Assembly: GCA_047495785.1 (NCBI GenBank)
Contig: JBLDXI010000028.1
Coordinates: forward strand, 1,905,462-1,969,461
Direction of reading: 5' to 3'
DNA from: Lepidodermella squamata
Taxonomy: Eukaryota > Animalia > Gastrotricha
DNA length: 64,000 bases
Below the pieces are notes generated by a model. That model did no database searches, had not been told where the DNA came from, and saw only the letters and a program-made list of their open reading frames with translations. The translations under genes were made by a program, and so were the position numbers. The first letter of the stretch is position 1. The number at the start of each line of letters is the position of its first letter. Shown here one piece after another: positions 1 through 52,286 of the stretch.

Positions 1-1463
1 CTCATTGACGTCAGCTTTGTAGAATCAACGAAACGCCTATTGAGCAAAAGCTTCACGTTTCACCGCGTTGTTACTCATGTGGAGAAATTGGATGCCAAGG
101 TAAGTTTTTATCGCTTATTTCGTATCAAAACTTCATTCCCTACAATATCCAGGAATATATGTACTGGGAATTTCATCAATCAGCGAAAAATGGGAAAACT
201 GAAAACTTCAAAGATTTGCTAAGCAAGGTTCCGGAAGCTGGACTTGATTTGATAATTCGGCATGTAGATGAAACTGATCAAGGAAGAACGGTTCTTCATC
301 AAGCAGTTGCTTCAGGATCTTTGGAAATTTTTCAAATGTTGTCGCCTCGCTTGTCATTTGAAGACTTGAAACAAGGCGATTCCAATGGCGAAACCATCTG
401 CCACCTTGCGGCTAGTTTCCCTGGAATACTTGATCATATCTTGAAAATCGACCCTTCAATCTTACCAGTTCGTGATAAAAAGGGTCGAACAGTTTTGCAT
501 TTGATGGCTTCTAATGGCAGAGTCCCCATCAGTGCTGTTGAGAATTTCAAAGCAATAGTTGACTTGGTTGATTCCGGTAAGAACACTGCTCTTCTTGTCG
601 CATGCGAAAAGGCTAACTCGCAAATGGTCAAGTTTCTCTTGGAAGTTGGCGCAAATATGCGGTTGTCAAGGGGAGCCATGATGCCAATTCACGTCGCCGC
701 AAGTAATAATCACGTTGAAGCTGTGAGAATGATAGCGAGCAAGGATGCTACTATGTTGGATGCTTGTAGTGAAACTGGCTACACTGCTTTTCTGGCCGCT
801 TGCTTCAAGGGTAGTGTTGACGTAATGAAGGAATTGTTAGCAACCTGTCGAAATCAAAAGCTCAGTACGCTTTCTGCGATCCATGTAGTCGTTTATAGTT
901 GCAAAGTCGAAGCTGTTGCGCTTCTCGTCGAAAACGGCTTCGATGTGAATTGCAAACAAAATTCCGTAATGACAGCCTTCTTCCGCGCTGTTGAGAGTGG
1001 CAGCTTACCTGTTGTAAAATATATAATTGAGAAATGCCCAACGGCTTACAGCGAAACGGCACTGCATTACGCCGCTTCTTGTAAAAATGACGATACTGCT
1101 ACGGCAATGATTTCCTATTTCATTGAGTCTCATTCAACGCCTGTTAATCTGAAAGCTTCTGTAAAAAAGCAGCCGCCAACTACTGCGTTGATGATTTGTG
1201 CCGAAGCTAATCACGTTCTAGCGTTTGATTATCTCATCAGCAAAGGAGCTGATCCAGTTATTGTTGACGATAGCGGGAACAACGTCCTTCATATTGCGAT
1301 TGAAAAGCTGTCTCGTGATGTGATTGAAAGCATTCTGAAACTTCCTGTTGCTGGACAGCTGTTGCGAAGCAAAAATGGATCTGGCGTCACGCCAATCGTT
1401 GTTTCAAAGCCCAATTTTCCCGATGATCTTATCGAACGAATGCGTCAAGTCATCGCGGCTTGA
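1..1463 (+). CDS. TRIM-like ankyrin-repeat gene 1 (subfamily A), 5'-partial; last exon 153-1463 encodes ~12 ankyrin repeats
   Basis: Intron 100-152 (GTAAG...CAG). Ankyrin motifs (TVLHQAVASG, TALLVACEKA, NVLHIAIEK). Close paralog of the last exon of gene 4, which carries the RING/B-box N-terminus. Confidence 0.85.
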
Positions 1464-1754
1464 ATTTACACATTTTTAATGAGCTGAATTGTTTTCTAAT
1501 GCTCCTATTGCTGAATGCTTAAATCTAAAATTAAAAACATGAAACATACATATAGGAATCCCATTAGCTTTTCTCAGTTGATTCGTTATCGGTCCGTCAT
1601 TTCATTTCATTTATTTATTTAGGTATTTATTTACTCAGTATAAATCCCATTATTGAGAGCTCGAATTATGAAAAGTGGCGAGTGAAAGAAACAATATAAG
1701 GCAGAACAGTTCCTGTATGTTCAGGGCGTTTCTTGAGTCGCAACAATCTGGCTT

Positions 1755-2430
1755 ACTAACTGTGAACAAGTCAAGTGCAATTACTAGTGTGATGGCGTCG
1801 GGGGTCGGAGGCTTCGCCTATGCCGCATCGAAACGTTACCGTAACCAAATGGACGTTGCGTTTCCGAGCACCCTAGGCATAAGGCCATGGCTAACTCTGG
1901 CGCTTGCTTGACCGTTAGCTCGACCGCATAGCATGGGTATGATCAATGACTGAAAGTGCCCTCTGGTGATCTGGTGATCGTGATCGTAGGGGAAGTCGCG
2001 TTATTCGCGTTTGATGTTGCTTTCGTTGTCGCTGTTGGTTGACGTGAAACCAGGGGCGAAACATTCGAACCACGTGTTACGTTAGCCAAGTTGCCCTGCC
2101 ATTTCTCTCGAAAGTTGGCGATAAGCGACTTACTCTTAGCGACTTCCTGACTATTTAGCCAGAAGAAAGTGTTTCATAGCAAATACCCTGAATGTTCGGG
2201 GAGCGTGCGAGTTGTAGGCATGCAATGTCATTACGCAGTAGGCCTCAGATCGGCTGTCGCTCTGATTCGAGTGACAGGTTTTTGGTTCCGCTTACGTAAA
2301 TTTGGCCCTGGCAAGAGGCGGAAAAGTAATAGTAAGCACGAATGAGATAAAAGTAAGTTATTATTCCTCGCCAATGTTTAACTCCAATGTAGTGACCAGG
2401 TCGGGCCGGGTCACGCTCAGGATCAGGCGG
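1755..2430 (-). mobile_element. Degenerate Mutator-like (MULE) transposase relic, copy 1
   Basis: Minus-strand translation near 1990-2072 gives WFECFAPGFTSTNSDNESNIKRE, resembling the W-x-x-G-x-P-S-T-N-N-x-x-E motif of animal MULE transposases. Stops and frameshifts present. Homologous to 7170-8185. Confidence 0.45.
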
Positions 2431-3990: not shown

Positions 3991-6690
3991 ATGGCTGATG
4001 CAAAACCGAAGTCTGTCCGGAGTTCGATTGTTGAGGTACCTAATCATTTTAAAAACCTGTTGCAAACATTTATAGTGAGTATGTTTTCAGGCTTTGAGGT
4101 GCACCGTATGCTTGGAACTGAGCCCTGAAGTTAAAATGCTGAATGAATGCGGTCATTCGATTTGTGCCACATGTCTCTCTAAGCTGAACGAAGATAACAA
4201 GAAATCGGTATTTTGCCCTGAATGCAGAACTGAGACTGTTCTGCCGAAGAATGGTCTCGCAGCTCTGCGGACAAATTTTGCCGTGAAAAGAGCAATCGAA
4301 GCTTTAAAAAGCGATGAGCCGATTGATACGAAGAAGAGAAAATTAGGCGAAGGCTGCAATCATCTGGCGTTCGTTGAGAAAGATGAGATCACACGGTGCA
4401 AACACTGCAGAGAGGACTTCTGCGAGAACTGCTACCGGTGTCACCTGGAAAAAATACGCCTGGAGGCTAGATATGCCAGTTATAACGTAAAAACCCAGCT
4501 TAAAATATCAAAATATACCTATATTCATTTATATTCAGCTTCGAGAAACTTTCACCTCGTCGATGACCTGCGTTAGAAAACGGTGCCAAATCATTCGCTC
4601 GAAAATTGAAAGCGTTTCCGATGCGGTCAATGTGGAGATTGACAGCAGTTGCAGAGCGCTCTTAGAAGCTTTGGAGATAACTATTCAGAAGCGGGCTGGG
4701 CAGCTTAAGGCAAAAACAGCTGAGTTCAAAATGGCCCAGCTCGAAATATTCGAGAAAATGACTTCTAGCGATGAAGCGGATGGATTGCAAGAACTTGAAA
4801 AGCTGGCTTCCGAATGCATCAATGCTTCGCTGTTATTCGTCTCAGACAGCAGTATTTTGAAATTTCATGAATTATCAGGAGCGATTCGACGAAAGGTTGG
4901 AAACCCTGCTTTACAACTTGGTTTTTACAAATTTTTCTAATTTTAGTGCGGTAAGCTGATGCGATACGAGCGTGACGAATGGAATCCTTCTGAGGTCAAA
5001 TTAACGTGGCCTGAATCTGATCTTGTCAAAACATTTGCGGACATCCTGACCAAGACAACCGACGTTGATTCTACACCTGTGGCTATATATGAAGCAATAA
5101 GGACGGTACATTTTACGGCTTTTCCTGATCTTTTCTCTCTATATCTGGTTCAATAGCGCGATTCGCGATTTCATTATAGCTATAGTAAATTTGATTTTCT
5201 ATTGTTTTTGCATTTCAGGGCACTGAATACCACGTAATCCATGACGCTGCTCGAACTGGTAGTTTTGAATCGCTTCAAGCGCTCTTCCAGCAAATACCAG
5301 CCGGCTGCGAACCCATCGTTATTGATCATCAGGATGCGCGAGATGGCTATAAAACATTGCTGCTCCAAGCTGCAGCTGACAGTTCGATTGAAAAAGTCGA
5401 ATTTCTTCTGTCAAGACCTAAAATCGATACGCTAGCGATGGATTTCGAACAGCGAACGGCGGCTCACCTTGCTTCGCGAAATGGCAACTTGGCTGTCCTA
5501 AAGCTTTTGCTGGCAAGGGAGCCTAGTTTGAAAGGATTACGTAGCTGCAAATGGTTCAATTTGCTACACGAGGCTGCGAGTGGCGGTCACCTGAATGTCG
5601 TAAAATTCTTGGTGGAAGATGAGAAATTCGACTTGGAAGCCACTGATGAATTGAATGGATATACTGCTGCAATTTTGGCTGCGATTAACGGCAATTGCGA
5701 TGTTGTAAAGTATTTGCTTGAGCGGGGTGCTAATTTCGCCCATCGTGACTCTACAGATGGCGGACTGCCAATAATGCATGCTGCCTGGAATAAAAAACTT
5801 GATGTGGTGAAGCTGCTGTTGAAGAAGAACCCTGATTTCCTGAACCAGGTTGACTCAAAAGGGAGGTCGCTGCTGCGGCATGCAGTTGATGGCGGTGATA
5901 TTAATGTCATAAAGTAAGTCAGATGAGCCAGATGTTTTCGACAAAATGGCCCCGTGGCCCTAAAATCGAATAATTATTCAAGTAGTCGTGATTGTATTTC
6001 ATTTGGGCAAATTTTCAATTTTCCCTGCCTCTCCTCTAATTTAGATGGCTCCTCAAGAAACCTGTCGAAATAGACCGCCTTGATGAAAATGGCGAAACTG
6101 CTCTGTTACAAGCTGCCAGGGAAGGGTATTACGATGTTGTTAAAATTCTGATCGATCACGGAGCAAATATCCAGGCTGAAAATACGAATGCGGAGAAATT
6201 CTACCACGTTTGTGCCGAGTCTGGTAATGTTGATTTATTAAAATTGGCATTTGAGCTGTTTCCTGGCTCCGAATTGTTGCCTGATAATTACGGATTCACG
6301 AGTTTGCACGCTGCTTCTTATGGGAAAGATGCTATAGATTGCTTGAAATTCCTTCTCGAACGCGTCGGTCACGCCATCGATATGCCAACTGAGCCTATGA
6401 AGTGGACCCCTCTGTTGTTAGCTGCGCGACGGGGAAACATTGGAAATTTGGCATTTCTGCTCGAAAACGGCGCTGATATCAAGGCACGCAATAGTAACGG
6501 GAAAAACGTGTTACATGTAGCCATTGAAGAAGAGCAATACAGAGTTGTATCGTTCTTGATCAAACGTCCAGAAGCTGCTTTTTTGTTGAACCAGGCTGAT
6601 GAAAATGGGTACACGCCGTTAAAACTGGCTTACGATGATGAGTGTTTTCCGTCAGAACTGGATGATGAAATGCTAAAATGGCAATTATAG
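3991..6690 (+). CDS. TRIM-like RING/B-box/coiled-coil/ankyrin gene 2 (subfamily B)
   Basis: Exons 3991-4035, 4091-4486, 4539-4895, 4947-5105, 5219-5913, 6045-6690, all with GT-AG introns. C3HC4 RING (CTVC...CGHSICATC...CPEC), B-box-like CNH...CKHC...CENC...H, coiled-coil region, ankyrin repeats. Confidence 0.9.
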
Positions 6691-7175: not shown

Positions 7176-8185
7176 GTGAACACGTCAATGATCGGGGGCT
7201 ACGCCGATGCCGCTTCGAAACATAAGGATAGGTAAAGGGAAGCTGCGGTTCCGACTACCCGGGCATAAGGCCGTGGCTAATTTGTCTGCTCGAGTTGTGA
7301 GGGTGGCGACTGCGGCTCCGGGCCGGAAGAGCCCTTGAGGTAAATATGTCAACGCCGAGGGTCCGATCGGACCTGTTCCTGTTCTTCCGCGTCTTCAGCT
7401 GTCTCCGCTGTCGATGTGGTTGCTGCGATTTTTTTCAGCGCCATCGTAACCTTCAACTTTGTTGTTGCAAATAATCTGTATTTTTTCTGTCGTCCCGTCC
7501 AATGGCATTTGATCGCGATAGGCGAAGTCGCGTTTAATAATTGCACTGTAGCTTTTGTTACCGTTGTTGGTTGACGGTATACCAGGTGCGATACTGTCAG
7601 GGAAACATTAAGACTTGGCTAGGTACTACTCTATACTTTATTGTGAATGAATCGAACATTGATCGTTGGAATTCAAGGCCTTAAATATTGGCGATACAAT
7701 TCTAAGTCGAACACGCGATCACTTCCTAATTAGATATCACATGAGAATCACAATATTGTTCATAGCCATTGCGTAGAAGCCAGCTGCCAAACGGCACATC
7801 GTTACAGATACCTTTGATCCACGTGTTATGTCACTAGCCATTTTCCTCGAACGTGGGCGATAAACGGCCCAGCCTCGGCGAAATCCGACCATTTAGCCAG
7901 AAACAAGTCTTCAAAGAAAGAATAAGACGTTCGGGGAGCGTGCGATTCGTAGGCAGGTAATATCATTACGCAGCTGGCCTCAAATTGGCTGTGCACTGAT
8001 TCCGCTTACAGTAAATTTGATCCCGGATGAAGTTAATTTTCTTCGTCAATGTTGGTCTCCAAGGTAGCGATCAGGTTGCGCCGGGTCGATCTAAGGATCA
8101 AGCCGAAATTGAGTGACTAGATGATGATGTAGCTTCGATGTGGGACTCAGCAAAGGCGAGCACCCGTGACAGTCGCAGGGACATT
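7170..8185 (-). mobile_element. Degenerate MULE-like transposase relic, copy 2
   Basis: Minus-strand APGIPSTNNGNKSYSAIIKRDFAYRDQMPL (7500-7595) and FLAKWSDFAEAGPFIAHVRGKWL (~7835-7905). Homologous to 1755-2430. Confidence 0.5.
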
Positions 8186-9048: not shown

Positions 9049-11688
9049 ATGGCTGATGCTAAACCGAAGTCTGTCCGGAGTTCGATTTTTGAGGTACCTA
9101 ATCATTATAAACCTGTTGGAAACATCAGTTCTTATGTTTTCAGGCTTTAAGCTGCGCCGTGTGCTTGGAACTGAGACCTGAAGCTAAGATTCTTAACGAA
9201 TGCGGCCATTCGATCTGTGCCACTTGTCTTCCGAATCTGAATAAAAATAACAAAAAATCGGTCTTTTGCCCTGAATGCAGAACTGAGACTGTTCTGCCGA
9301 AGAATGGTCTCGCAGCTCTGCGCACAAATTTCGCCGTGAAAAGGGCAATCGAAGCTTTAAAAAGCGATGAGCCGATTGAAGCGAAGAAGAGAAAATTAGG
9401 CGAAGGGTGCAACCATCTGGCCTTCGTTCAGAAAGATGAGATCACACAGTGCAAACACTGCGAAGAGAACTTCTGTGAAAATTGCTATCGATTTCATCTG
9501 GAAAGAATTCGCCTGGAGGCTAGATACGCCAGTTATAATGTAAAATCTCAGCTTAAAATCTCAGTAAATATATTTTTATTTATTCAGCTTCGAGAAACTT
9601 ACAACTCGTCGATTACCCGCGTCAGAAAGCGGTGTCATATCGTTCGCTCCAAAATTGAAAGCGTTGTCTATGCAATCAATGAAAAGATTGACAGCAGTTG
9701 CAGAGCGCTCTTGGAAGTTATGGAGAAAACTATTCAGAAGCGGGCTGGACAGCTTAAGGCAAAAATGGCAGAATTAAAAAAGACCCAGCTGGAAATTTTT
9801 GAGAAGATGGTTTCAAACGATGAACTGGATGGACTGGATGAACTTGAAAAGTTAGCTTCCGAATGCATCAACGCCTCTCTGTTATTCGTCTCAGACAGCA
9901 GTATTTTAAAATTTTATGAACTATCAAAAGATACTCGACGGAAGGTTTAAAGTTTGAAACCATGCTTCACTTTTTGATTTTATCATTTCTCCAACTGCTA
10001 GTGCGACGAACTGTTGCGATTCGAAAATGGTGAATGGACTTCCTCGGTGGTCAAGTTAACGTGGCCTGAAACCGATCTTGTCAAAAAAATTTCTGACATC
10101 TTGACTAAGGCAACTGATATCAGTTGTACACCTGTGGCAATAGATGAAGCACAATCGGAGGTAAAGATCCGTTTCTGATATATTTCTCTTCACCGACTTC
10201 GATAATGCTGTTATTAAATTAAGAGTGTGGTCCTTTGAATTCTAGAACACTGAATACCACGAAATACATGACGCTGCTCGGACTGGTACTTTCGATTCTC
10301 TTCAATCGCTCTTCGAGAAAATACCGATCGGCTGCGAACCCATCGTAATTCAACATCAGGATGCGCGAGATTATGATAAAACATTGTTGCTGCAAGTTGC
10401 AGCTGAAGGCTCGGCTGAAAAACTAAACTTCCTTCTGTCAAGACTTGGCATTGATACGCTAGCGACTGATGCAGATGGCAGAACAGCATCTCACCTTGCT
10501 TCGCGGAATGGCAACTTGGATGTCCTAAAGCTTTTGCTGGCTAGGGAGCCTAGGCTGAAAGAATTACGTAGCAACGAAGGGTTCAATTTGCTACATGAGG
10601 CTGCGAGTGGCGGTCACCTGAATGTCGTAAAATTCTTGGTGGAAGATGAGAAATTCGACCTAGAAGCCACTGATGAATTGAATGGATATACTGCTGCAAT
10701 TTTGGCTGCGATTAACGGCAATTGCGATGTTGTAAAGTATATGCTTGAGCGGGGTGCTAATTTCGCCTATCGTGGCTCTACAGCTGGCGTCTTACCGATA
10801 ATGCATGCTGCTGCGAATATACACATTGATGTGGTAAAGCTGCTGTTGAAGAAGAACCCTGATTTTCTGAACCAGGTGGACTCAAACGGAAGGTCGCTGC
10901 TCAATCATGCAGTTGGGAGCGGAGACATCGATGTCGTAAGGTTAGCCAAACAAAAAATTAGTCAAAAAGCAGGGGCGTAACTAAGGGGGGCGGGGCAGGG
11001 TAACCCAAATTTTGAAATTTTTATTTATCTTCCCTCTTCTAGATGGCTCCTCAATAAACCTGTCGAAATTGACCGCCGAGATGGCTATGGCGAAACCGCT
11101 CTGTTACGAGCTGCTAGGGAGGGATATTACGACATTGTTGAAATTATGATCGATCACGGAGCTGATGTCCGTGCTGAAACGTCGAAGGCGGAAAAATTCT
11201 ACCACCTTTGCGCCGAGTCTGGTGATGTCGATTTACTGAAATTGGCCCTTGGATTGTTTCCTGGCTCGGAATTGACACCCGATGGTTACGGATACACAAG
11301 TTTGCACTGCGCATCTCATGGGAAAGATGCTATAGATTGCTTGAAACTCCTTCTTGAACGCGTCGGTCATGCTATCGATATGCCAAATGAGCCTGGTAAT
11401 TGGACCCCTCTGTTGTTAGCTGCGCGACGAGGAAACATTGGAAATGTGGAATTTCTGCTTGAAAGTGGAGCTGATATTAAGGCGCGTAATAATGACGGGA
11501 AAAACGTGTTACATGTAGCCATTGAAGAATCACGATACAACATAGTATCATTTATGATCGAACGTTCTGAAGCCGCTTTCTTATTGAACCAGACTGATGA
11601 AAATGGGGATACGCCGTTAAAACTGGCTAGCAACGATGACGATTTTCCGCCAGAAACGTTTGGTAAAATGCAGAAATGGGAATTATAG
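9049..11688 (+). CDS. TRIM-like RING/B-box/coiled-coil/ankyrin gene 3 (subfamily B)
   Basis: Same six-exon layout as gene 2 (MADAKPKSVRSSIFE|gt at 9094). RING CAVC...CGHSICATC...CPEC. Ankyrin exons ~10245-10940 and 11043-11688. Confidence 0.9.
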
Positions 11689-12095
11689 GCTCATTACTAC
11701 GAGAAATGTGAGAAATGTGAGAAATGTGAACAAGCAGCTAATTATTCTCGATCTGTCTTACCCATTTTTCAAAGCTAAAAGTTGATAAACCTCCAATTTC
11801 CAATCGAATAAATCTCCAAATTATTTACCGAAGCATTCATTTTGGTTAAAGATTAACACGATTGGCATATATTTATTTATTTCATTTCGATTTTGAGCCT
11901 AGAGTTTTAGAGTTGGAAGATATTAATAATGTTTGGTGATTCTGAAGCACCGAATATGACTGACATATTGGTGCAAATACATGCCCATAGTTCCTAGTTC
12001 ATTACGAAAAAGGGTAAAAAGTGATGATGATGTTGTGTTCAATTTATTGCTTCGTCTAAGATTTGTGATAAATACTTTATCTATCGAATTGTCTA

Positions 12096-19636: not shown

Positions 19637-22600
19637 ATGGTGAACGACACATCGCGTACTGCAATTTTTGAGGTTGCTCCACTTCAATTTGATCATAAAC
19701 AAGATTTCTTATTATTCAGTATGTATCAGGCTCTGTGTTGCGCTGTTTGTCTCGAATTATCACCTAATGCGAAAATTTTGACAAATTGCGGGCATACTAT
19801 TTGTGCTGAATGTCTAGCCAAGCTTGTCGAAAAATCAAATAATTCGGCAATATGCCCGGAATGCAGAGAGCAGACTAAGATTCCCAAAGCCGGCTTACGT
19901 ACAAATTATGCTGTCAAACGAGTCGCCGAAATGGTGATGAAAGAAAAAACAAAACCTGCCCTTCGCTTCAAACCGGGCGAAAAATGTAGCCACGCTCACT
20001 TCATCGCTAAATGTGATGTGGAGATTTGTCCGCATTGTGAAGAAAGCTACTGCTCATTATGTTACTTGCTTCATATTGAGCGGGTTAAACTGAAGGCGTT
20101 ATTTTCGTGTCACAAGGTGATCCGAAATTTACAATCTGAAACGCCCTGTGATATTTCTCTGTTTTTCAGATTCGCGAGAAATTTGAGTGTAACACTGCTG
20201 AGGTTGACAAACAAGCTGATTCGATACGCCGTAAAATTGACGAAAACGCTGATTCTGTCAAAGGTCAGATTAAGTCATCCGGCGAAGCTTTGGTGGAATG
20301 GTTCAAGAATGTGATTGATAATCGCTGCGACGAACTGATTGCTAAAGTTGAAGGAATGCGGGGTCGTACACATGAATGTTTTAATGAGTTTATGTCGAAA
20401 GACTGGATGGGCAAGTTGGAGGAGGTGGGAACTCTGGCTTCAACACTCGTAAGCTCGTCGCCGTTGTGCCAGTCCGCTGAAGATGTTATATCATTGCATT
20501 TTCTAGCGAAAGAACAGAGAAGCAAGGTTGGGAGTTATCGATATAAAAACTAATATTAATGGGTGTTTTGCAGTTGGGCGAATTCTTAAACATCGAGAAA
20601 TGCGACGCGGCTAAGTCGAAAATCTCTTTTGCTTACAATCAATCCATCAAGGAGCGTTTAGCTACTGTCATTTCGGAATGCACGAATGTCACCGTTGAAA
20701 GAGACAAAGTCCCAGAGATCGATTTTGAGGTAATTTCTGTGGGTGTACATTTTCCTGCTATCAATTTAGTTTTTTCGCCGACGAAACTAATATCGCCATC
20801 AATTTCGCTAACGGCTTGGTTTTTCTTGCCAACAAAATTTGAAAATTCCCACCAGCGCTGTTATCAGCTGTTCAAAACGTAGATAGCTTGATTTCTAAAT
20901 TTGAAAGGAATTGCTCTTATTCTGCCCTTTTTGTAAATTAATTAAAGCTATGAAAAAGCTTGAAAGACAGAAACCAACAATAAAATGACACGGCCATATA
21001 ACAGAATACATTTTTATTAATTAGCTCAGGCCATAGATAAAGGGAAGCATTTGTTTAAGTTTTTAGACAATTAGATAGAACTCATCAATAGCCCGACAGA
21101 ATAACGTTAACGCGAAACAGCGAACGCAACTAAACAACGTAATTACCACTTGCGACGTAACAGAGCATCGAACTTCATCGAGCTGGTCTAGATATAGAGC
21201 CAATATCAGTCAATATGTCAGTAAATTCATTATTAAATATATTTTCTTTGTAAAATTATGAATGAGACGGCCTCAGTTTTCGGTTGATCTTCGCCAGTCC
21301 TGAATCTTCACCTTGCCAAACCACTGTGTTTTGAAGTACTCATAGACTTGTTGAATTTATGCTTGTTGATTCAGCATTCGACAATTGGTCTTTGATATTA
21401 GTTGAAATGCGGTCGGCACTTTTCGAGCAGGTATAAGCGGCAGGGCCATAAGACGCTTCGCAAGAGTTCAAATAGACGAGCCGGCTGTTGAATAAAGCCC
21501 AATGAAATATTTTTGCTGAATCCAACGAATAACCGACTGTAATTAGGTTGGTTATAACTCAAGTGGAATATTTCTGTATTTGTCCTTTTTGAGTTCGAAG
21601 TGCAAAAAAACAGTGAAAAGGTAGACTTACAATCCAGTTGAAGATTTTATCGGGTCTCAGTTCAGCAACTCACAGATCTTTTCCAGGGCAAGGTTTGAAC
21701 CCCTAAGGATAGCGCCTCTTAAACGGCTAGCGTGGAATTTCAGGAATAGCGGCTTATGCCAAGCATGTCTTCTCCTCAGCCTGGTGCCGCTGTTCGGCGA
21801 TGAATCAGATTTCTTTCGTTGAGCTCGTTCCTTTCTCTCCGGTGCCTAGATTGAGTCAAGCTGCACTTTTGAAGGGATTTTTTAACAAGATCTGTCTGTT
21901 GTATCGAAGAGATAGCTTTGACCATGCAGGCCGCATGTAGCGGCTTTATAAACGACGCGCAGCCCCCAGCTGCTCTAGATAGGCAATGACCATGCCGTCA
22001 AGATGCTGCGGTAATGAGGTAGGGCGTGAAGTAATCGTTGATCGAGAGATAATTAAAATATACAGTGTTGAAACTTGACTCAAAATCAGTTGAGTGTGAG
22101 TTTAGTGTGAGGCTGCTCCACCGCGGTCGTTGCGACCGCGACGTCGTCCATCATGACGAATTTGATCGTTAATTCTTAAATGCGGAAACGTTTGAAGTAT
22201 TCTTATCAGAGCCTTTATATAGAGGATATTGAGCGATATGGCATTAAAGAACGCCTCCGTCGTGTAAAAACTACGATCGTCAATTCAAAGCCCAGATATA
22301 GATATTATTATAGTTTTTCAGTTTTCGATTTCAAATTACAGTTCTAATCTTAATTTATCCCTTTGTTTGCTTCCTAATCTAGGGTGATGCATACCATGAA
22401 TTTCACGCAGCCGCATCCCTTGGAGACGTCGAAGCGCTCAAGGGCCTGATCAGCCGAATTCCGAAAAACTTCGTAAAATTGGTCGTTGATCACCACGACA
22501 AACGAGATTCCGAACGAACTCCTCTGCTTCAGGCTGCTGCTTCTGGTTCAGTCGAAGCAGCTGATTACCTCGTGGCGCTTGGTGCCGACCCATTAGCTGT

Positions 22601-23726
22601 TGATTTGAACAAAAAAGCCATCTTCCATATCGCAGCTAAGCATGGTCATTTAGGTGTGTTAAAAATGTCTCTCGAGAAAAAGCCCGAGATGATGGAGCAA
22701 AGAGATCGATACGGTTTGAATTGCCTTCATGATGCCGCTCTGGCGGGGCAATTAGATGTAGTCAAGTATTTGGTCGAGGATTGTTCTTTTGACTTGAACG
22801 CAAGAGACAGTGGGGTTACTGGGCAAACTGCTGCACATTTGGCTTGCATAAGTGGCAATTTTGAAGTCATAAATTATCTTATTCACAAAGGTGCCAATTT
22901 TAAAATAGCTGACTTCGAACTTGCCCGTACACCAATAGCCGTCGCATGCGCAAGAGGAAATTCTAAACTGTTTCAAATTTTGCTCGATCATGCGCCAAAG
23001 GCTGCTTTGCTACGAGATAAGTTCGGCCAGTCGTTGCAATATCTTGCTGCTGGTAACGGTTATGTTGAAATCGTCCAGAAACTATGTGAGACACTTCCAG
23101 ATTTGCTTGAAATCGTTAATTGCGACGGCTTCACGCCTCTTCTGATAGCTGCTAAATACGGTCAATTGGATGTAGTTAAGCTTCTGGTCACGTTTGGAGC
23201 TGATACAAAAGCTAGAGATAATAATGGCGAAACCATAATTCATCAGTGCGCAAGGTCTGGAAATCTTGAACTGCTGAAATATGCCATGGATTTATACCCA
23301 GCAAGCGACGAGGTTATCGATGATTTTCTTTGGACCCCACTCCACTCAGCAGCGGCGGGTCTGAAAGGGACTGACTGTGTCGATTATTTGCTTCAAAAAA
23401 CTTGGCATATGATCGAATCATGCACGTCTGACCATCTGACACCACTTCTTGTGTCATCGAGAACTGACAACTTGAATATTTTCAAATATCTACTGTCGAA
23501 AGGTGCTAGTCTTTGGGCGACGGCCGACAATGGTGACAATGTTCTCGGCGTGGCACTGAGGAATAAATCTTTCTCCATTGTGTCACATTTACTTGACCTG
23601 CCAGAAGGTAAATTCTTGGTTGTGCATCAGAACAAAAACAAAGAGACTATCAATCAAATTGCTAAGGAGGTCAACCGTTTGCCCGAAGACCTTTTCCGTA
23701 AAATCTCACAGCTTGCATCAGCCTGA
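19637..23726 (+). CDS. TRIM-like RING/B-box/coiled-coil/ankyrin gene 6 (subfamily C)
   Basis: RING CAVC...CGHTICAEC...CPEC. B-box-like CSH...CPHC...CSLC...H. Long intron 20730-22382. Single ankyrin exon 22383-23726. Confidence 0.88.
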
Positions 23727-23911: not shown

Positions 23912-26900
23912 ATGGTGAACGACACATCGAATAGTGCCATTCTTGAAGTTGTTCCCCTTCACTTTGATTATAAACGAGTTTTCTCATTATTCATTTATAT
24001 CAGGCTCTGTGTTGCGCTGTTTGTCTCGAATTATCCTCTGATGCAAAGGTTTTGACAAATTGCGGTCATTCTATTTGCGCTGAATGTCTTGCCAAAATTC
24101 TCGACAAGTCGAAAAAATCGGCAATTTGTCCGGAGTGCAGAAAAGAGACTAAAATCCCATCGTCTGGTTTGTGTACAAATTACGCCGTGAAACGAGTTGC
24201 CGAGGTTTGCAATGAAGCGAAATCGAAGCACGCAAAGTGGTCGAAACCGGGCGAAAAATGTAATCATGCTCACTTTGTGGCGAGAAATGATATGACGATA
24301 TGTCCCCATTGTGAAGAAAGCTACTGTTCGTTATGTTACTTGCTTCACATTGAGTGCGTCAAACTCGAAGCTTTATTTTCGTGTCACAAGGTGATCCGAA
24401 ATTTACAATCTGAAACGCCCTGTGATATTTCTCTGTTTTTCAGATTCGCGAGAAATTTGAGTGTAACACTGCTGAGGTTGACAAACAAGCTGATTTGATT
24501 CGCCATAAAATTGACGAAAACGCTGATTCGGTCAAAAGTTCGATAAAATCATCCGGCGAAGCCTTGGTGGAATGGTTCAAGAATGTGATTGATAATCGAT
24601 GCGACGAACTGATTGCTAAAGTTGAAGGAATGCGGGGTCGCTTACATGAACGTTTCAACGATGTCATGTCGAAAGACTGGATGAGCAAGTTGGACGAGGT
24701 GGAAACTCTGGCGTCAACACTCGTAAGCTCGTCGCCGTTGTGCCAGTCCCCTGAAGATGTTATATCATTGCATTTTCTAGCTAAAGAGCAGAGATGCAAG
24801 GTTAGCACTTATCAATGTAAAATCTAATATCAACGGGTTTTTTCAGTTGGGCGAATTCTTAAACATCGGGAAATGCGATGCAGCTCTGTCGAGAATCTCT
24901 TTTGCTTTCGAGAATCAATCCATCATTGAGCGTTCAACTACTGTCATTTCGGAAAGCACGAGTGTTACTGCGGAAACTGACAAGTTCAAGGATATCGGTT
25001 CTGAGGTATTGTTTTACTTTATACGGCTTAATTGCGGTGCGACCTGAGAGAGTTAGGAGTTAGGAAATCAGAATGGAGATGAACCGATCGTGCAATCGGG
25101 AATCACAGTTCGTGGTTTTTGGAGTCGAGGCCGTGTCGGTTCAGCGTAGTAGTGGTTCGTAGTTTACATTAGACATTACGACTTGCAGAAATTTACGTTC
25201 ATTCTGTTGATTTGTTTGTTATCACTAGAGAAACGAAAACAGTCGATATTGCGAAGATACATCGATTGTCAGAGTAGTGAAACGCAACAATTTTGAGGTA
25301 AGAATACGACCCAACACATGCTCCAGCTCGAGATAGCTCGGCTGCAGCCTTTCTAGGCACCCCGGCTTCATGGCATAGGCAATGTCTACTACACTTCTCG
25401 TAAGCCACGGGCCCGACCGACGGCAAAATTCTAGAGGCGATCATCTAGAGGCGATCATGATTACGATACTACGTCAAATGTGCTATTGAAGTTCAGGGCT
25501 ATAGTGACTAGCTTCCAGTGTCGTGACGGAAAGGGCTATGACCACGTCGTTGACCAGACGGAATGGGGTATCTGTGGCGCTTTTGCCTCGCCAAAATCCG
25601 AACTGGTGGCTGGATGGCAAGTTTCTATTAACTATTAACTTATAATCCCGATCTTCCAAGTCTTTGGTACATAGTACATAGCCGCAATTCAGGCTCTGTT
25701 CATAAGGCGTAAGTGAGAGGCTTGGACCACCATTTTAATCACATTGTTTGATATTTCTTCATGACCGAGAGCATTGAATTATTATAGCTTTTTAAACAAT
25801 TCTTTCATTGAAGATTTCGAGATTCAGCTTTTCTGGCATGCATATTGGCTGTGCGGCTGGGTTAGACTCGATCCCATCCTCTATCGCACGCCAGAAATCG
25901 TGATCTGAGCTGAATGCTGATGTCACAACAGGAGTTGAGACTGCTTTGGCGAATGTCTTGGCAATGAGTTCAGCTTTTGCCTTGCCGTCGGTGATGGATT
26001 TGCCTTTTGCGGTCTTGTCTTGCGGCCAACAACTGCGTTTGCACCTCGTGTTTTTTCAGTAGATTCATTAGATCAGACCCATGCCGGTTTTGCTGTTGAA
26101 GTTTTCTGTCATAGCTCGGAGGCAGAGCTCACAGTCATTGCAATTTTCTTCGCGACCAGATTTTCTATTTGCTTTGAGATGGCGGCATTCAGGGTGGTTT
26201 TAATATAAGCTTTTTCCGTATGTGGATGAAGGCGCTGCAGCTTGTTTCTTTGTTGCAGCGCTGTAGCAATCGGTGTTGTCAATTTCCAACTTTGTATCTC
26301 CCTTGCCATATGCCGTTTTATCGCTCCAACGATAACTTCCAGGTAGCGGAACCTTTCCTACCAACAGCGCGCCAGGGTGAGCGCACTAAACCACAACTTG
26401 TTCAGCCGCTTTATGAAGCTGAACGCGTTTCTCAAATGTATTACTTCGGCGACGACTATTGCCTGCAAATCGTCCATTTGCTCATCGGTTAGTTGTTGTT
26501 GGCCAGTATTTAAAGATACGCTGGTACAAAGGAACGATAGCGTGTAGATCAATGAGATTCCTCGAGGCTTCAACCTTCACAGCCGGGTGCTCCTGAGCGC
26601 CTTTTGCGCGCAAACCACGACATAGGCAGGCGAGGGGTGATCCCGCAGATCAGCAACAGCGTAGATGAGCACCCGATAGCCGATAGCCGGGGCGATGAGC
26701 ACGGTAGTCAGACCCCTTGAAAGCATATATGTTGTCGATTTGTTGAGCGAAATTGAAGTTTCGATATTCCTAATTTAATTTTTCTCAACGTTTTCCTAAT
26801 CTAGACTGATCCATACCACGAATTTCACGCAGCCGCTTCCCGTGGAGAAATCGAAGCCCTCAAGGACGTCATTGGCCGAATTCCGAAAAACTTTGTCAAA

Positions 26901-28148
26901 TTGGTCATTGAACACCGCGACAAACGAGATTCCGAACGAACCCCTCTGCTTCAGGCTGCTGCTTCTGGTTCGCTTGAAGCAATTAACTACCTTCTGGCGC
27001 TTGGTGCCGACCCATTAGCTATTGATTCGAACCAAAGGGCGACCTCTCATATCGCAGCTAAGCACGGTCGTTTAGACGTGATGAAAGTTGCTCTTGAGAA
27101 GAAGCCGGAGTTGATGGAACAAACAGATCACCACGGATCAAATTGCCTTCATGATGCCGCTCTGGCGGGGCAATTAGATGTAGTCAAGTATTTGGTCGAG
27201 GATTGTTCTTTTGACTTGAACGCAAGAGACAGTGGGGTTGCTGCGCAAACTGCTGCTCATTTGGCTTGCAGTAGTGGCAATCTTGAAGTCGTCAAATACC
27301 TAATTGATAAAGGTGCCGATTTTAAAATAGCTGACTTGGAAAAAGAGCGTACGCCAATAGCCGTGGCATGCTCGACGGGAAAGTCGGAAATAGTTAAATT
27401 TTTGCTTAATCATTCGCCAGATGCCGCATTGCAACGAGATAAGTTCGGCCAGTCGTTGCTATCTCTCGCTGCTGACAACGGTCATGTTGAAATTGTTCAG
27501 AAACTATGCGAGACATTTCCAGATTTGCTCGAAGTCGTTAATGGTGAGGGTGTCACCCCTCTCCTGATAGCGGCTGAAAGCGGGCATTTGGATGTAGTTA
27601 AGTTGTTGCTCGAGCGTGGGGCTGATTTAAAAGCTAGAGATTCTAACGGGGAAACCCTAATTCACCATTGCGCATGGTCTGGAAATCTTGAACTGTTGAA
27701 GTATGCCATGGATCTCTACCCTGAAAGCGAAAAAGTTGTCGATGATTTTCTGTGGACCCCACTCCACTCAGCAGCGGCGGGTCTGAAAGGGACTGACTGT
27801 GTCGATTATTTGCTTCAAAAAACTTGGCATATGATCGAATCATGCACGTCTGACCATCTGACACCACTTCTTGTGTCATCGAGAACTGACAACTTGAATA
27901 TTTTCAAATATCTACTGTCGAAAGGTGCTAGTCTTTGGGCGACGGCCGACAATGGTGACAATGTTCTCGGCGTGGCACTGAGGGATAAATCTTTCTCTGT
28001 CGTGTCACATTTACTTGACCTGCCCGAATCTAAATTCTTGGTTACGCATCGGAACAAAAACAAAGAGACTATCAATCAAATCGCTAAGGAAGTTTTCTGT
28101 TTGCCCGAAGAACTTATCCGTAAAATCTCACAACTTACATCAGCTTGA
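23912..28148 (+). CDS. TRIM-like RING/B-box/coiled-coil/ankyrin gene 7 (subfamily C)
   Basis: Close paralog of gene 6 (MVNDTS start). Long intron 25006-26804. Ankyrin exon 26805-28148. Confidence 0.88.
25200..26500 (-). mobile_element. Degenerate non-LTR retrotransposon (LINE) RT relic inside the gene 7 intron
   Basis: Minus-strand fragments in correct RT order: KAKAELIAKTF, SHQFGFWRGKSATD (~25575-25612), EAGVP (~25360), FHYSDNRCIFA (degenerate YADD, ~25250-25285). Many stops. Confidence 0.7.
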
Positions 28149-28270
28149 GCAGTTTTTGAATAACGCGCAACATCCAAGCTCTTGTAAAGATATTGCTTGC
28201 ATGCTGAAGTTAAATAAATTGTTCTCTGGCTAATTTTTGTTTGTCTTGTAGTACCTTAAATCTATTTACA

Positions 28271-31083
28271 ATGGCTGGAAGCTCAAAGTCTATCAGGGCT
28301 TCAATTCTTGAGGTTTAATTTATTGAAACGCCGTAAATTCCACGTAACTTGAATTTCTTAGGCTTTAAGCTGTGCCGTCTGCTTGGAGCTTTGCCCAGAA
28401 GCTAAAATTCTAAACGAATGCGGCCATTCGATTTGCGCCGCTTGTCTCTCAAAGCTGAATGAGGGCAACGATAGAACGACGATCTCGTGCCCTGAATGCA
28501 GAACTGTGACAACTCTGCCGAAAAATGGCCTCGCAGCCGTGCGTACAAATTACGCTGTGAAAAGAGCGGTCGAAGCTTTGAAAAGCGACGATATGATGGA
28601 TTCGAAGAAGAAAAAGCTGGGCGAAGGTTGTCGTCATTTGACATTTGTGGGGAAAGACGAAGTCACGCAATGCAATCACTGTGATGGTAACTTCTGCTCA
28701 ATGTGCTATCGTTTTCACCTGGAAAGGATACGACTCGAGGCCAGATTTGCCAGCCATAATGTGAATACCTTTTTCGACCTAAAAAGGGAAAAAATTGGTT
28801 TCAACGTATAACGGCATTTGTATTTATTAGCTCCGTGAATCATTCGACTCATCGATCTCCCGCATCAGTAATCAGGCTGACACCATTCGAGCTGATATCG
28901 AAAAGGACGCTCGTGAAATCAACGAGAAAATCGAAACCAACTGCAAAGAGCTTTTGGATGCCTTGCAAAAGGCCGTTGCGCAGCGGGCTCAGCAGCTTAA
29001 AGAAAAAACCTCTGAACTCAAAGCAAAACAGCTTGAGATGTTGAAGAAAGTTGTTTCCACTAAATCTTTGGATGGGTTGGATGAAATTAATAAGTTGTCT
29101 TCTGACTGCGATGGTGCCTCTCTCCTATTCGCGTCGGACAGTAATGTTTTAAAATTCCATGACTTATCGAGGAAGGCACGGATCAAGGTTTGAAACTGAA
29201 CGGAATTTAGGAAGATTGAAAATGCAATATGTATGTCATGTTTTGAAATGTATAGTACGATGAGTTGCTGCAGTTCGAAGTCGGAAAATCTGAATTTTCT
29301 AAGATCGAGCTGACGTGGACTGACAAGTCTCTTACCGTCGAATTTACCGATATGCTTCAGAAGGTGACTGACGTCAGTTTTACCAAGTCTTCTGCGCCTG
29401 AAGAAGCCCATTTAAAGGTAAAATTGATTACCTATGAGATTCCGTTTTCTTCACTGCAGTGTTCCGAGAACGGGGGGTAAAAGGGGGGGGGGGGGGGGTA
29501 AAAAACGAACCCCCCTGGCGTCAGAAAATTTCTGTAAAACGTAAGGGTTCCCCCTGTTGATTTGCAAATTTTGGGCTCAAAATGCTCGAGTTACCTCCCT
29601 CAGAGCTGGACCTAGTCGGATCACTGCTTCACTGTCACATTTCTAATTGCATTTCAGAATTCTGAGTACCACAAAATGCATGACGCTGCTAAAATGTCTT
29701 CGTGCCTGTGTCTCGAACTGCTTTTCGATCAAATTCCAAAAGGTTGCGAACCGCTTGTCATCGAGCATCAAGATGAACGAGATAGCAAAAGAACGCTTTT
29801 GCTGCAAGCTGCAGAATCTGGTTCGCTGAGCAAAATCAACTATCTGCTGTCCAAATCTGGAATCGATATTTTAGCAACTGATTCCGATGGGAAGACAGCA
29901 GCGCATATCGCTTCGAATGGTGGTCATCTTGAAGTCCTGAAAATCTTGCTGACACGCGAGCCAACTTTAAAGAACGTCCGTGAAAGTAACGGGCTAACTT
30001 TGCTGCACGAAGCTGCGAAGAATGGCCGCTTAAATGTCGTAAAGTTCATTGTTGAAAATGAAAACGCTGACCTTGAAGCTGTAGATAGTGACGAGAACGG
30101 CAATACCGCTGCATGTTTAGCCGCGATTCAAGGCGACTGTGATGTTGTGAAATATTTGCTAGAGCGGAATGCTAACTTTTCCCACCGGTCTGCTTGTGGC
30201 GTTTTGCCTGTAATGCACGCTGTATCAAATGATAAATTGGACGTGGTGAAGTTTCTGTTGAAGAAGAATCCTGATTTTCTAAACCAGGTCGACTTTGACG
30301 GCCAGTCGCTTCTCCACCATGCAGTCGAAAGTCTTAAAGTCGATACCTTGAAGTAAGTTAATCCAGCTTATAACGATACCTTCCTACTGCGCATTTCGCA
30401 TATTACGCCATTGTTTACTTCTTGATTATTTCAGGTGGCTTCTCAAGAAACGTCTTGAAATGGAGCGCAAAGACAACTGCGGTGAAACCGCTCTGTTACA
30501 AGCCGCTAGATACGGATATTTCGAATCCGCTAAAATTCTAATTGAGCGCGGTGCTGACGTTCATTCCGAAACATCCGAGATGGAAAAATTCTACCACGTT
30601 TGCGCTCAGTCTGGAAATGGCGACTTGATGAAATTGGCCTTGGAACTATTTCCTGGCTGTGAGTTGCTACCGGATGGTTATGGGTTCACGACTCTTCACT
30701 GCGCTGCTTTTGGATGTGAATCCTCTATTGATTGCTTGAAAGTCCTACTCGACCGTGTCAGCCACGCTATTGAAATTCCAACTGAGCCCGATAAGTTGAC
30801 CCCTCTTTTGCTAGTTGCGCGGAACGGTCACATTGAAGCTTTCAAATATTTGCTCGAAAAAGGCGCTAGCGTGAAAGCGCTGAGTAACGAAGGCGAAAAC
30901 GTGTTACATTTAGCAGTGATTGATAAACGTTACGACATGATGTCATATTTGACCGAGCGTCCTGAAGCCGCTTTCTTCATCAACCAGGCTGATAAGGATG
31001 GTGTTACGCCGTTTCAGATGGCCAGCAGAGATGACGCCCTTCCTTCGAAAATTCGAAGTAACATGCAGAAATGGGTTTTATAG
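28271..31083 (+). CDS. TRIM-like RING/B-box/coiled-coil/ankyrin gene 8 (subfamily B)
   Basis: MAGSSKSIRASILE|gt. RING CAVC...CGHSICAAC...CPEC, B-box-like region, coiled coil, ankyrin exons ~29659-30352 and 30435-31083. Confidence 0.88.
29457..29626. mobile_element. hAT-type MITE in a gene 8 intron
   Basis: TIRs CAGTGTTCCGA / TCGGATCACTG. Perfect 8-bp TSD CTTCACTG at 29449-29456 and 29627-29634. Confidence 0.85.
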
Positions 31084-52272: not shown

Positions 52273-52286
52273 TCTGAATGTATGTA

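What the first reader, a model, noticed from the sequence alone, without database searches (positions are those of the whole stretch)
1..31083. Tandem array of TRIM-like E3 ligases with ankyrin-repeat C-termini (RING-B-box-CC-ANK)
Seen: eight co-oriented spliced genes (one partial) plus a relic, each joining a C3HC4 RING, a Cys/His B-box-like motif and a coiled coil to ~10-12 ankyrin repeats, in three subfamilies (A: genes 1, 4; B: 2, 3, 5, 8; C: 6, 7). Established: TRIMs use the C-terminal domain (PRY-SPRY, NHL and others) for target recognition, and ankyrin is not one of the standard vertebrate TRIM C-terminal classes. Tandem birth-and-death expansion is typical of immune TRIMs. Inference: a lineage-specific family of variable-sensor ubiquitin ligases, plausibly an innate or antiviral recognition system.
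Basis: partly seen in the sequence, partly recalled or inferred. Interest (0 to 1): 0.85.

Follow-up and report, generated by a model that had tools for sequence, protein, structure and literature searches.

The report
Tandem TRIM-like ligases ending in ankyrin repeats
An unidentified animal genome carries eight neighbouring genes for ubiquitin ligases built like TRIM proteins, but with a long ankyrin-repeat arm where TRIMs normally carry their target-binding domain; the design is real and rare, and nothing yet shows an immune role.

Summary
Window 1-31083 carries seven intact genes and one 5'-truncated gene, all on the + strand, with 5-6 exons each and GT-AG introns mostly 46-130 nt long. They encode proteins of 692-768 aa. 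Each has a C3HC4 RING, a divergent B-box-like Cys/His zinc domain, a roughly 100-residue helix, a 53-aa linker and 11-13 ankyrin repeats. The "relic" was not found.

The N-terminus is TRIM-type. Its nearest solved relatives are the TRIM2, TRIM56, TRIM32 and TRIM3 RINGs, and its nearest database relatives are TRIM-NHL and filamin proteins. None of the 150 closest representatives has ankyrin repeats. However, three contigs from other unnamed organisms carry a related first exon followed by ankyrin ORFs, one of them in tandem, so the family is wider than this genome.

A probable RNA run covers exons rather than introns and confirms one predicted splice. No single transcript yet links RING to ANK.

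dN/dS is below 1 everywhere: 0.14-0.22 for RING/B-box, 0.22-0.40 for ANK, and 0.23-0.68 at canonical ANK binding positions. The genes are therefore functional, but diversifying selection and an immune role are not shown.

An earlier follow-up in this scan reached the same reading for a second cluster in this genome (s1-365905).

Verdict: a new variant of a known kind.

The parts
1..1463 (+). g1, subfamily A, 5'-truncated by the window edge. Linker-exon end 1-99, intron 100-152, ankyrin exon 153-1463 (stop included).
   Evidence: Ank_2 E 9e-48. 65% identical to g4 over 401 aa. Donor AAG|GTAAGT and acceptor CAG| match those of g4.
3991..6690 (+). g2, subfamily B, 766 aa. Exons 3991-4035, 4091-4486, 4539-4895, 4947-5105, 5219-5913, 6045-6690.
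   Evidence: Intact ORF. RING Pfam hits and ANK hits.
9049..11688 (+). g3, subfamily B, 766 aa. Exons 9049-9093 (N-terminus), 9144-9539 (RING + B-box-like), 9588-9944 (long helix), 10002-10160 (linker), 10246-10940 and 11043-11688 (ankyrin repeats).
   Evidence: Intron 9540-9587 is confirmed by a GT..AG joint 9539>9588 in run X1 and is absent from DNA run X2. Structure models.
12096..14435 (+). g4, subfamily A, 692 aa. Exons 12096-12143, 12199-12376, 12432-12643, 12694-13044, 13095-13253, 13308-14435. It has an extra intron inside the RING region and lacks 65 aa (two repeats) relative to g1.
14867..19382 (+). g5, subfamily B, 766 aa. Exons 14867-14911, 14961-15356, 15418-15774, 17619-17780, 17833-18524, 18737-19382. 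Intron 3 is 1844 nt.
19637..23726 (+). g6, subfamily C, 760 aa. Exons 19637-19672, 19730-20116, 20170-20526, 20574-20729, 22383-23726. A single ankyrin exon follows a 1653-nt intron.
   Evidence: Ank_2 E 3e-89.
23912..28148 (+). g7, subfamily C, 761 aa. Exons 23912-23947, 24004-24390, 24444-24800, 24847-25005, 26805-28148. Intron 4 is 1799 nt.
   Evidence: 80% identical to g6.
28271..31083 (+). g8, subfamily B, 768 aa. Exons 28271-28312, 28362-28760, 28831-29187, 29256-29417, 29658-30352, 30435-31083.
23343..23534 (+). Tract of the g6 ankyrin exon that is 100% identical to the matching tract of g7 (27765-27956), inside exons that are otherwise 76-94% identical. Probably a recent gene-conversion tract.
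   Evidence: sliding 96-nt identity.

Best explanation
These are eight paralogous genes for cytosolic RING-type ubiquitin ligases of the TRIM/RBCC design. A long ankyrin-repeat solenoid (11-13 repeats) takes the place of the usual C-terminal target-binding domain (NHL, filamin, PRY-SPRY).

Proposed mechanism:
1. The RING, which keeps all eight zinc ligands and the CPECR arginine after the last cysteine, recruits a ubiquitin-charged E2.
2. The B-box-like zinc domain runs straight into a helix of about 100 residues, which, as in TRIMs, would pair into an antiparallel dimer.
3. The concave face of the ankyrin arm binds the substrate or partner. The three subfamilies and their diverged surface residues would give different specificities.

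The family arose from a TRIM-NHL/TRIM2-like ancestor by replacement of the C-terminal domain. It grew by local tandem duplication, with repeat-number change (g4 against g1) and gene conversion (g6 and g7).

Shown here: the architecture, intactness, purifying selection, TRIM-type RING and fold, exon-biased signal in a probable RNA run, and one splice.

Inferred: E3 activity, dimerisation, and the ankyrin arm as the substrate receptor. The cellular role is not known. General substrate-specific protein turnover or regulation is at least as likely as immunity.
For: Gene models: seven intact multi-exon ORFs with shared intron positions and phases.

Domains: Pfam RING above gathering score and strong ANK.

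Solved structures: a profile search of PDB sequences puts TRIM2 (E 5e-13), TRIM56, TRIM32 and TRIM3 on top. The alignment runs through the LPxxG(l)aaLrtN motif after the RING and into the TRIM2 B-box.

Predicted structure:
- The RING/B-box exon model has pLDDT 85.5, with a strand-strand-helix second zinc domain.
- Foldseek matches the TRIM2 RING at rmsd 1.6-1.8 A and 36% identity, and aligns TRIM21 RING-B-box, KAP1 and TRIM72 RBCC over 115-280 columns.
- The RBCC model has one helix over residues 112-224, followed by two short helices.

Sequence relatives:
- BLAST collinearity with a six-NHL TRIM (P0159) extends to residue ~241.
- Zinc ligands C89, C103, C106, C111, C114 and H118 are conserved in >=90% of 32 aligned relatives.
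- Contigs L001, L002 and L004 from other samples have a related first exon followed by ANK ORFs above the Pfam cut-off. On L004 the match is collinear with residues 323-583 at 30% identity, E 1.5e-23.

Expression: run X1 (kind guessed as RNA) shows exon-biased depth and the joint 9539>9588.

Selection: dN/dS is 0.14-0.22 for RING/B-box and 0.22-0.40 for ANK.
Against: - No read or contig spans RING and ANK exons, so one transcript is inferred, not shown. X1's kind is only guessed as RNA, and it is held as short contigs.
- The Pfam B-box models are not significant (best ANCHR-like_BBOX E 0.011; zf-B_box absent).
- A typical eighth ligand (H-x2-H) is kept only in subfamily A.
- Profile-profile comparison of the helical exon with TRIM-NHL coiled coils is weak (probability 21%).
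- The RBCC model includes 16 intron-encoded residues (133-148), because spliced proteins could not be handed to the tools.
- No biochemical data exist for any member.
Confidence: 0.75

Rival explanations
1. The family is a diversified intracellular immune or antiviral sensor system: TRIM5- or TRIM21-like restriction factors whose ankyrin surfaces track pathogen or mobile-element proteins under diversifying selection.
For: - Tandem expansion into three subfamilies here, plus a second cluster of about 15 genes and wrecks elsewhere in the genome (earlier finding s1-365905).
- Canonical ANK binding positions vary more between paralogs than framework positions do (0.52 against 0.32, Mann-Whitney p 9e-6), and their dN/dS is usually higher.
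- Repeat-number change and gene conversion occur.
- TRIM expansions in vertebrates are often immune (general knowledge).
- Polinton-type and other mobile elements are abundant in this genome.
Against: - dN/dS at the binding positions is 0.23-0.68, never above 1.
- Exposed ANK positions are the least constrained in any ankyrin protein, so greater variability there is expected without an arms race.
- There is no pseudogene in this window.
- There are no expression data under challenge and no fusion or linkage to known immune domains.
- The closest relatives (TRIM2, TRIM3, TRIM32, TRIM71-like) are mostly developmental or neuronal ligases.
Confidence: 0.2
2. The RING/B-box/helix part and the ankyrin part are separate neighbouring genes that merely alternate along the array, so the fused architecture is an annotation artefact.
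For: - No single RNA contig bridges the two parts.
- Prokaryote-style gene callers list them as separate ORFs on the foreign contigs.
Against: - In all seven genes the exons join in frame through canonical GT-AG introns of 46-130 nt. In g5, g6 and g7 one intron each is 1.65-1.84 kb.
- The ankyrin exons start exactly at an acceptor site. In the B and C genes they directly follow a stop codon and no start codon opens them.
- Intron phases are conserved across subfamilies that are only 26-38% identical.
- The same order and spacing recur on three foreign contigs.
- X1 depth is present on both parts and falls to 0-1.6 in introns and intergenic DNA.
Confidence: 0.04

Closest known systems
TRIM-NHL / TRIM2, TRIM3, TRIM32, TRIM71 and TRIM56-type RBCC ligases
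   Same: - C3HC4 RING, with the same post-RING motif (LPxxGxxaLxxN) and helix.
- A single B-box-type zinc domain and a long helix, in the same order.
- 36% identity and 1.6-1.8 A rmsd to the TRIM2 RING.
- They are the best hits in the PDB sequences and in the 1.84-billion-protein representative library.
   Different: - The C-terminus is 11-13 ankyrin repeats instead of an NHL propeller or filamin domain.
- The B-box is divergent (C-x-H-x11-C-x2-C-x4-C-x2-C-x3-H) and is not recognised by the Pfam B-box models.
- The best library hit scores only 95 bits.
ASB proteins (ankyrin repeats + SOCS box) and Fem1-type Cullin substrate receptors
   Same: They use an ankyrin solenoid as the substrate-recognition module of a ubiquitin ligase (established knowledge). 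This is the best functional analogy for the C-terminal arm.
   Different: ASB and Fem1 have no RING of their own and dock onto Cullin-RING complexes. The proteins here carry their own RING, and no SOCS box or other Cullin adaptor was found by Pfam.
XB3/XBAT (plants, Giardia), Mind bomb and BARD1: other proteins that combine ankyrin repeats with a RING
   Same: Ankyrin repeats and a RING sit in one polypeptide. Pfam RING_XB3-XBAT31 gives a sub-threshold match (27-28 bits against a cut-off of 50).
   Different: - XB3 and MIB have the ankyrin repeats N-terminal and the RING C-terminal, with no B-box or coiled coil (PMC7029713 for XB3 and MIB architecture).
- BARD1 has RING, four ANK and BRCT, with no B-box or coiled coil.
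Unnamed RING/B-box + ankyrin genes on contigs from other samples (L001 from Logan SRR23086389; L002 from ENA ERZ27332993; L004 from ENA ERZ23486787)
   Same: - The same first exon, with the same Cys/His spacing (30-39% identity).
- It is followed on the same strand by ankyrin-bearing ORFs.
- L002 holds at least three or four such units in tandem within 10.4 kb.
   Different: - On L002 there are fewer and more degenerate ankyrin repeats, and the helix, linker and ANK lie in one exon.
- The source organisms are unknown.
- These sequences are not described anywhere I could find.

Membership tests
TRIM / RBCC ubiquitin ligases | N-terminal C3HC4 RING finger | tested here: met
   - Pfam zf-RING_UBOX (29.9-35.4 bits against a cut-off of 25.2) and zf-C3HC4 (28.6-29.8 against 21).
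- Ligands C4, C7, C20, H22, C25, C28, C42 and C45 are invariant.
- TRIM2 RING E 5e-13 and rmsd 1.6-1.8 A.
TRIM / RBCC ubiquitin ligases | One or two B-box zinc fingers directly after the RING | tested here: inconclusive
   For:
- An invariant Cys/His set at the right place.
- It is conserved in >=90% of 32 relatives, including ones with a Pfam-recognised zf-B_box (P0127).
- It aligns to the TRIM2 B-box.
- The model shows two strands and a helix.

Against:
- Pfam zf-B_box gives no hit, and ANCHR-like_BBOX only E 0.011-0.05.
- The spacing is C-x-H-x11 instead of C-x2-H-x7.
- The eighth ligand is missing in subfamilies B and C.
TRIM / RBCC ubiquitin ligases | Long coiled coil after the B-box that forms an antiparallel dimer | tested here: inconclusive
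   - The model gives one helix over residues 112-224 (pLDDT mostly 85-97), then two short helices, as in TRIM coiled-coil/L2 regions.
- It aligns over 271-282 columns with KAP1 and TRIM72 RBCC.
- BLAST collinearity with a TRIM-NHL protein runs to residue ~241.
- hhalign of the helix exon alone against TRIM-NHL helices gives only 21% probability.
- Dimerisation could not be tested with these tools.
TRIM / RBCC ubiquitin ligases | RING, B-box, coiled coil and C-terminal domain in one polypeptide, in this order | tested here: met
   - In-frame GT-AG models in seven genes.
- The intron between the B-box exon and the helix exon of g3 is seen spliced in X1.
- The same order recurs on foreign contigs.
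- Caveat: no single transcript spans the whole gene.
TRIM / RBCC ubiquitin ligases | E2-dependent ubiquitin-ligase activity | not testable with these tools
   Only indirect evidence: all zinc ligands are kept, a hydrophobic residue sits in C-x-[VI]-C, and the arginine in CPECR follows the last cysteine (sequence; its role comes from established RING biochemistry).
ASB (ankyrin repeat and SOCS box) substrate receptors | C-terminal SOCS box after the ankyrin repeats | tested here: not met
   Pfam finds only ankyrin families in the C-terminal exons. The proteins end 25-30 residues after the last repeat.
XB3/XBAT ankyrin-RING ligases | Ankyrin repeats N-terminal and a single RING at the C-terminus | tested here: not met
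   The order here is reversed: RING at residues ~18-60 and ANK from ~325. RING_XB3-XBAT31 scores 27-28 bits against a cut-off of 50.

The most novel reading that the evidence does not exclude
RBCC-ankyrin ligases are a previously undescribed class of TRIM-like intracellular receptors in a poorly sampled animal lineage. Their diversified ankyrin grooves would recognise proteins of viruses or of the Polinton-type and other mobile elements that crowd this genome, and mark them for ubiquitination. That would be a convergent counterpart of TRIM5/TRIM21 built on a different sensor fold.
Probability: 0.15. Interest if true: 0.8.

Novelty: new variant of a known kind. Interest (0 to 1): 0.55.

Why it matters
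TRIM ligases are classified by their C-terminal recognition domain, and ankyrin repeats are not among the described classes. I found no description in the searched literature, including the broad TRIM surveys PMC3503706 and PMC2533329.

None of the 150 nearest representatives in a 1.84-billion-protein library combines this N-terminus with ankyrin repeats. Yet the design recurs in this genome (a second cluster, noted earlier in this scan) and on contigs from three other samples.

It shows that the RBCC scaffold can be re-armed with a repeat solenoid, the same module that protein engineers use as designed binders (DARPins). It also gives a natural family in which the specificity of a self-contained RING ligase may be tuned repeat by repeat.

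If an immune role were shown, it would extend the TRIM restriction-factor logic to a new sensor fold in invertebrates. Without that, it is a well-supported lineage-restricted expansion of E3 ligases with unknown substrates.

Tried and rejected
1. Relic. tblastn of all seven proteins against the window at E 1e-3, and again at E 50 with short words, found only chance-level hits outside the exons. The relic is rejected.

2. Full-length relatives through the ankyrin exon of g6. Only generic ankyrin proteins came back (<=34% identity) and none has a RING.

3. Full-length relatives through the L002 helix+ANK ORF. It found only itself.

4. Representative-library search with the RING/B-box profile. 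There are 4269 hits, the best at 95 bits. None of the listed 150 matches the g6 ankyrin domain by phmmer. Lower-ranked hits could not be inspected.

5. hhalign of the helix exon against TRIM-NHL helices. It is weak (21%), so I do not use it as support.

6. Pairwise dN/dS by domain and by ankyrin position. No value exceeds 1. The method averages over sites and has little power with 2-4 sequences per subfamily.

7. Organism. The HACD gene at 38842-39594 gives about 50% identity to many bilaterians and 74% or 63% only to unnamed metagenome proteins. The host is an animal of a poorly sampled lineage; I did not identify it further.

8. Literature. Three searches and look-ups in three papers found no described RING-B-box-coiled-coil-ankyrin family. 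This is absence in an open-access library only.

9. Technical limit. Spliced proteins could not be given to the search or fold tools, which accept references only, so every search used single exons. The RBCC model reads through the 48-nt in-frame intron of g3.


Full report
**What is in the sequence**

The first 31 kb of the window (GC about 43%) hold many long open frames on the + strand. They alternate between RING-finger and ankyrin-repeat content.

I joined the frames through canonical GT-AG introns, choosing sites that recur at the same place in paralogs. This gave seven complete genes and one gene cut by the window start:
- g1: 1-1463, partial.
- g2: 3991-6690.
- g3: 9049-11688.
- g4: 12096-14435.
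- g5: 14867-19382.
- g6: 19637-23726.
- g7: 23912-28148.
- g8: 28271-31083.

Every complete model translates without a stop into 692-768 aa. Most introns are 46-130 nt. In g5, g6 and g7 one intron each is 1.65-1.84 kb.

Intron positions and phases are shared across the family. They are phase 0 after the short first exon, after the B-box exon, after the helix exon and after the linker exon. Subfamily B has one more intron inside the ankyrin region (phase 2). Subfamily A has one more inside the RING region.

**Subfamilies**

A full alignment gives:
- A (g1, g4): 65% identity.
- B (g2, g3, g5, g8): 58-79%.
- C (g6, g7): 80%.
- Between subfamilies: 26-38%.

The g2 and g3 units are 78% identical at the DNA level over 3.3 kb, introns included, so they are a recent tandem duplicate. 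g4 lacks a block of exactly 65 residues (two ankyrin repeats) relative to g1. g6 and g7 share a tract of about 190 nt with 100% identity, inside ankyrin exons that are otherwise 76-94% identical. Their large introns do not align at all. That points to gene conversion plus independent intron turnover.

The 'relic' of the finding could not be found at any sensible threshold.

**Domains**

Pfam recognises the RING above gathering score and the ankyrin repeats very strongly. It finds nothing for the helix and linker exons and no significant B-box.

In the six B and C genes aligned, the RING ligands are invariant. So is a second set: C89-x-H91-x11-C103-x-H105-C106-x4-C111-x2-C114-x3-H118.

A scan with the ankyrin consensus finds 11-13 repeats from about residue 325 to the C-terminus. 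The ankyrin domain is of the generic, consensus-like long-solenoid kind. Its best solved matches are NOMPC, ankyrin-1/2 and designed ankyrin proteins.

The N-termini (MADAKPKSVRSS... in subfamily B) read as hydrophilic, with no hydrophobic leader. I ran no signal-peptide or membrane predictor. The proteins are therefore most likely cytosolic or nuclear.

**Is the N-terminus TRIM-type?**

Sequence evidence:
- A profile of the RING/B-box exon searched against all PDB sequences puts TRIM2 first (E 5e-13), then TRIM56, TRIM32 and TRIM3.
- The alignment covers the motif after the RING (LPKxGLAALRTNF against LPEKGVAALQNNF in TRIM2) and continues into the TRIM2 B-box.

Structure evidence:
- AlphaFold2 on a 32-sequence alignment gives a confident model (pLDDT 85.5). 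It has a RING, a flexible linker, and a second zinc domain of two short strands and a helix.
- Foldseek matches the TRIM2 RING at 1.6-1.8 A and aligns TRIM21 RING-B-box over 115 columns.
- A second model, which adds the next exon, shows the B-box helix continuing as one helix from residue 112 to 224, followed by two short helices. This is the layout of TRIM coiled-coil/L2 regions.
- That second model aligns over 271-282 columns with the KAP1/TRIM28 and TRIM72 tripartite motifs.
- Sixteen residues of that model (133-148) come from the in-frame 48-nt intron of g3, because only contiguous references could be submitted. The true helix is correspondingly shorter.

A language-model feature search also lands on RING + B-box clusters from nematodes, rotifers and molluscs.

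Weak points:
- The Pfam B-box models miss the domain.
- Subfamilies B and C lack a typical eighth ligand.
- A profile-profile comparison of the helix exon alone with TRIM-NHL helices is not convincing.

I therefore call the protein TRIM-like (RBCC-like) with a divergent B-box. I do not file it as a proven TRIM family member.

**Relatives**

An exhaustive HMMER search of 1.84 billion representatives with the RING/B-box profile gives 4269 hits at E<=1e-3, and none better than 95 bits.
- The long proteins among the best hits are TRIM-NHL or filamin-type TRIMs.
- None of the 150 listed matches the family's ankyrin domain.

The very best hits are short ORFs of 135-165 aa that end where the first coding exon ends here, and they share the unusual Cys/His spacing. 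Their contigs are informative:
- L001 (a Logan assembly): the RING/B-box ORF is followed by an ORF with ankyrin repeats.
- L002 (a 10.4-kb ENA metagenome contig): at least three or four such units lie in tandem, each a RING/B-box ORF followed by a 410-460-aa ORF with ankyrin repeats above the Pfam cut-off.
- L004 (another ENA metagenome): the RING/B-box ORF is followed 400 nt downstream by sequence collinear with residues 323-583 of g3 (30% identity, E 1.5e-23).

The architecture is therefore not confined to this genome, and tandem organisation recurs. Searches from the ankyrin side found only generic ankyrin proteins, and the L002 ORF found only itself.

The host is an animal. Its HACD gene is about 50% identical to many bilaterian orthologs, and more similar only to unnamed metagenome proteins.

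An earlier follow-up in this scan described a second, 46-kb cluster of the same kind elsewhere in this genome and reached the same conclusion (s1-365905). I did not re-examine that cluster.

**Transcription and splicing**

Two public runs hold the stretch 9000-14500.

X2 behaves as DNA. Depth is even at about 70-210, the joint described below is absent, and many single-base differences suggest another strain or haplotype.

X1 is labelled 'RNA?' and is kept as short contigs. Its depth is exon-biased:
- 7-40 over most g3 exon stretches.
- 0.1-1.6 over the bins dominated by introns.
- 0 over the intergenic 11760-12127.
- 1-7 over most of g4.

X1 has a GT..AG joint at 9539>9588, which is exactly the predicted intron between the B-box and helix exons of g3.

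No contig bridges RING and ankyrin exons. A single transcript therefore remains an inference. It rests on frame-preserving introns, the lack of independent starts, conserved intron phases, and the recurrence of the same order on foreign contigs.

**Selection**

Nei-Gojobori estimates give dN/dS:

| Region | dN/dS |
|---|---|
| RING/B-box | 0.14-0.22 |
| Helix exon | 0.08-0.30 |
| Linker | 0.18-0.68 |
| Ankyrin region | 0.22-0.40 |

All members are under purifying selection and are working genes.

The canonical target-binding positions of ankyrin repeats are the positions randomised in designed ankyrin proteins: 2, 3, 5, 13, 14 and 33. At these positions paralogs differ more than at framework positions (0.52 against 0.32 mean pairwise difference, p 9e-6). 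dN/dS there is mostly higher (0.23-0.68 against 0.20-0.43) but never exceeds 1.

Exposed positions are the least constrained in any ankyrin protein. This pattern fits divergence of specificity, but it does not demonstrate an arms race.

dS is uneven along g6 and g7: 0.97 in the RING exon against 0.20-0.28 downstream. This agrees with the conversion tract.

**How it most likely works**

The best-supported model is a self-contained RING E3 ligase.
1. The RING binds a charged E2. All ligands, the hydrophobic residue in C-x-V/I-C and the arginine after the last cysteine are kept.
2. The B-box-like domain and long helix provide the TRIM-type scaffold, probably an antiparallel dimer.
3. The ankyrin solenoid is the substrate receptor, by analogy with ASB and Fem1 receptors of Cullin ligases.

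Architecture and constraint are shown. Activity, dimerisation and substrate binding are inferred.

The immune-sensor reading remains possible (I give it about 0.2), but no evidence here favours it over ordinary substrate-specific regulation. The nearest relatives (TRIM2, TRIM3, TRIM32, TRIM71-like) are not classical immune TRIMs.

**Novelty**

I found no description of a RING-B-box-coiled-coil-ankyrin family in the open literature searched. Such proteins are essentially absent among the closest database relatives. I rate it a new variant of a known kind (TRIM-like RBCC ligases with a new C-terminal recognition module), of moderate interest.

Noticed in passing
window 31931-34246 (+): Intronless 771-aa ORF directly downstream of the array. 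It has a Pfam ANF_receptor ligand-binding region (E 9e-15), followed by several hydrophobic stretches. It looks like a class-C GPCR-like receptor.
   Followed up: no
window 51691-60491 (mostly - strand): A run of ORFs that reads like a Polinton/Maverick-type element, with an integrase-like ORF at 59070-60491 and capsid-, ATPase- and protease-like ORFs upstream. Other first-reader notes of this scan already cover it. I did not analyse it.
   Followed up: no
window 38842-39594 (-): A 250-aa ORF (no intron modelled) for a very-long-chain 3-hydroxyacyl-CoA dehydratase (PF04387). It is about 50% identical to many bilaterian orthologs, and 74% and 63% identical only to unnamed metagenome proteins. 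The host animal therefore belongs to a poorly sampled lineage.
   Followed up: partly
window 23343-23534 and 27765-27956: A tract of about 190 nt that is 100% identical between the g6 and g7 ankyrin exons, which are otherwise 76-94% identical. The 1.65- and 1.8-kb introns just upstream do not align at all. This suggests gene conversion in the exon and independent insertions or turnover in the introns.
   Followed up: partly
window 1805-2268 and 7192-8002: Two short intergenic segments (90 and 171 nt, about 77% identical) recur downstream of g1 and downstream of g2. They are probably a dispersed repeat or remains of an older duplication unit. Nearby, 8185-8908 is a GC-richer, low-complexity stretch with spurious minus-strand ORFs.
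   Followed up: no
L002 1-10413 (ENA ERZ27332993, contig k141_550781): A contig from an unknown eukaryote in a metagenome. It carries three or four tandem units, each a RING/B-box exon plus a helix-and-ankyrin ORF, related at 30-39% identity to the window's genes. It is an independent tandem array of the same architecture.
   Followed up: partly
window 41722-42321 (-): A 199-aa ORF that reads like the C-terminal part of a non-LTR retrotransposon reverse transcriptase. This is judged by eye and was not tested.
   Followed up: no
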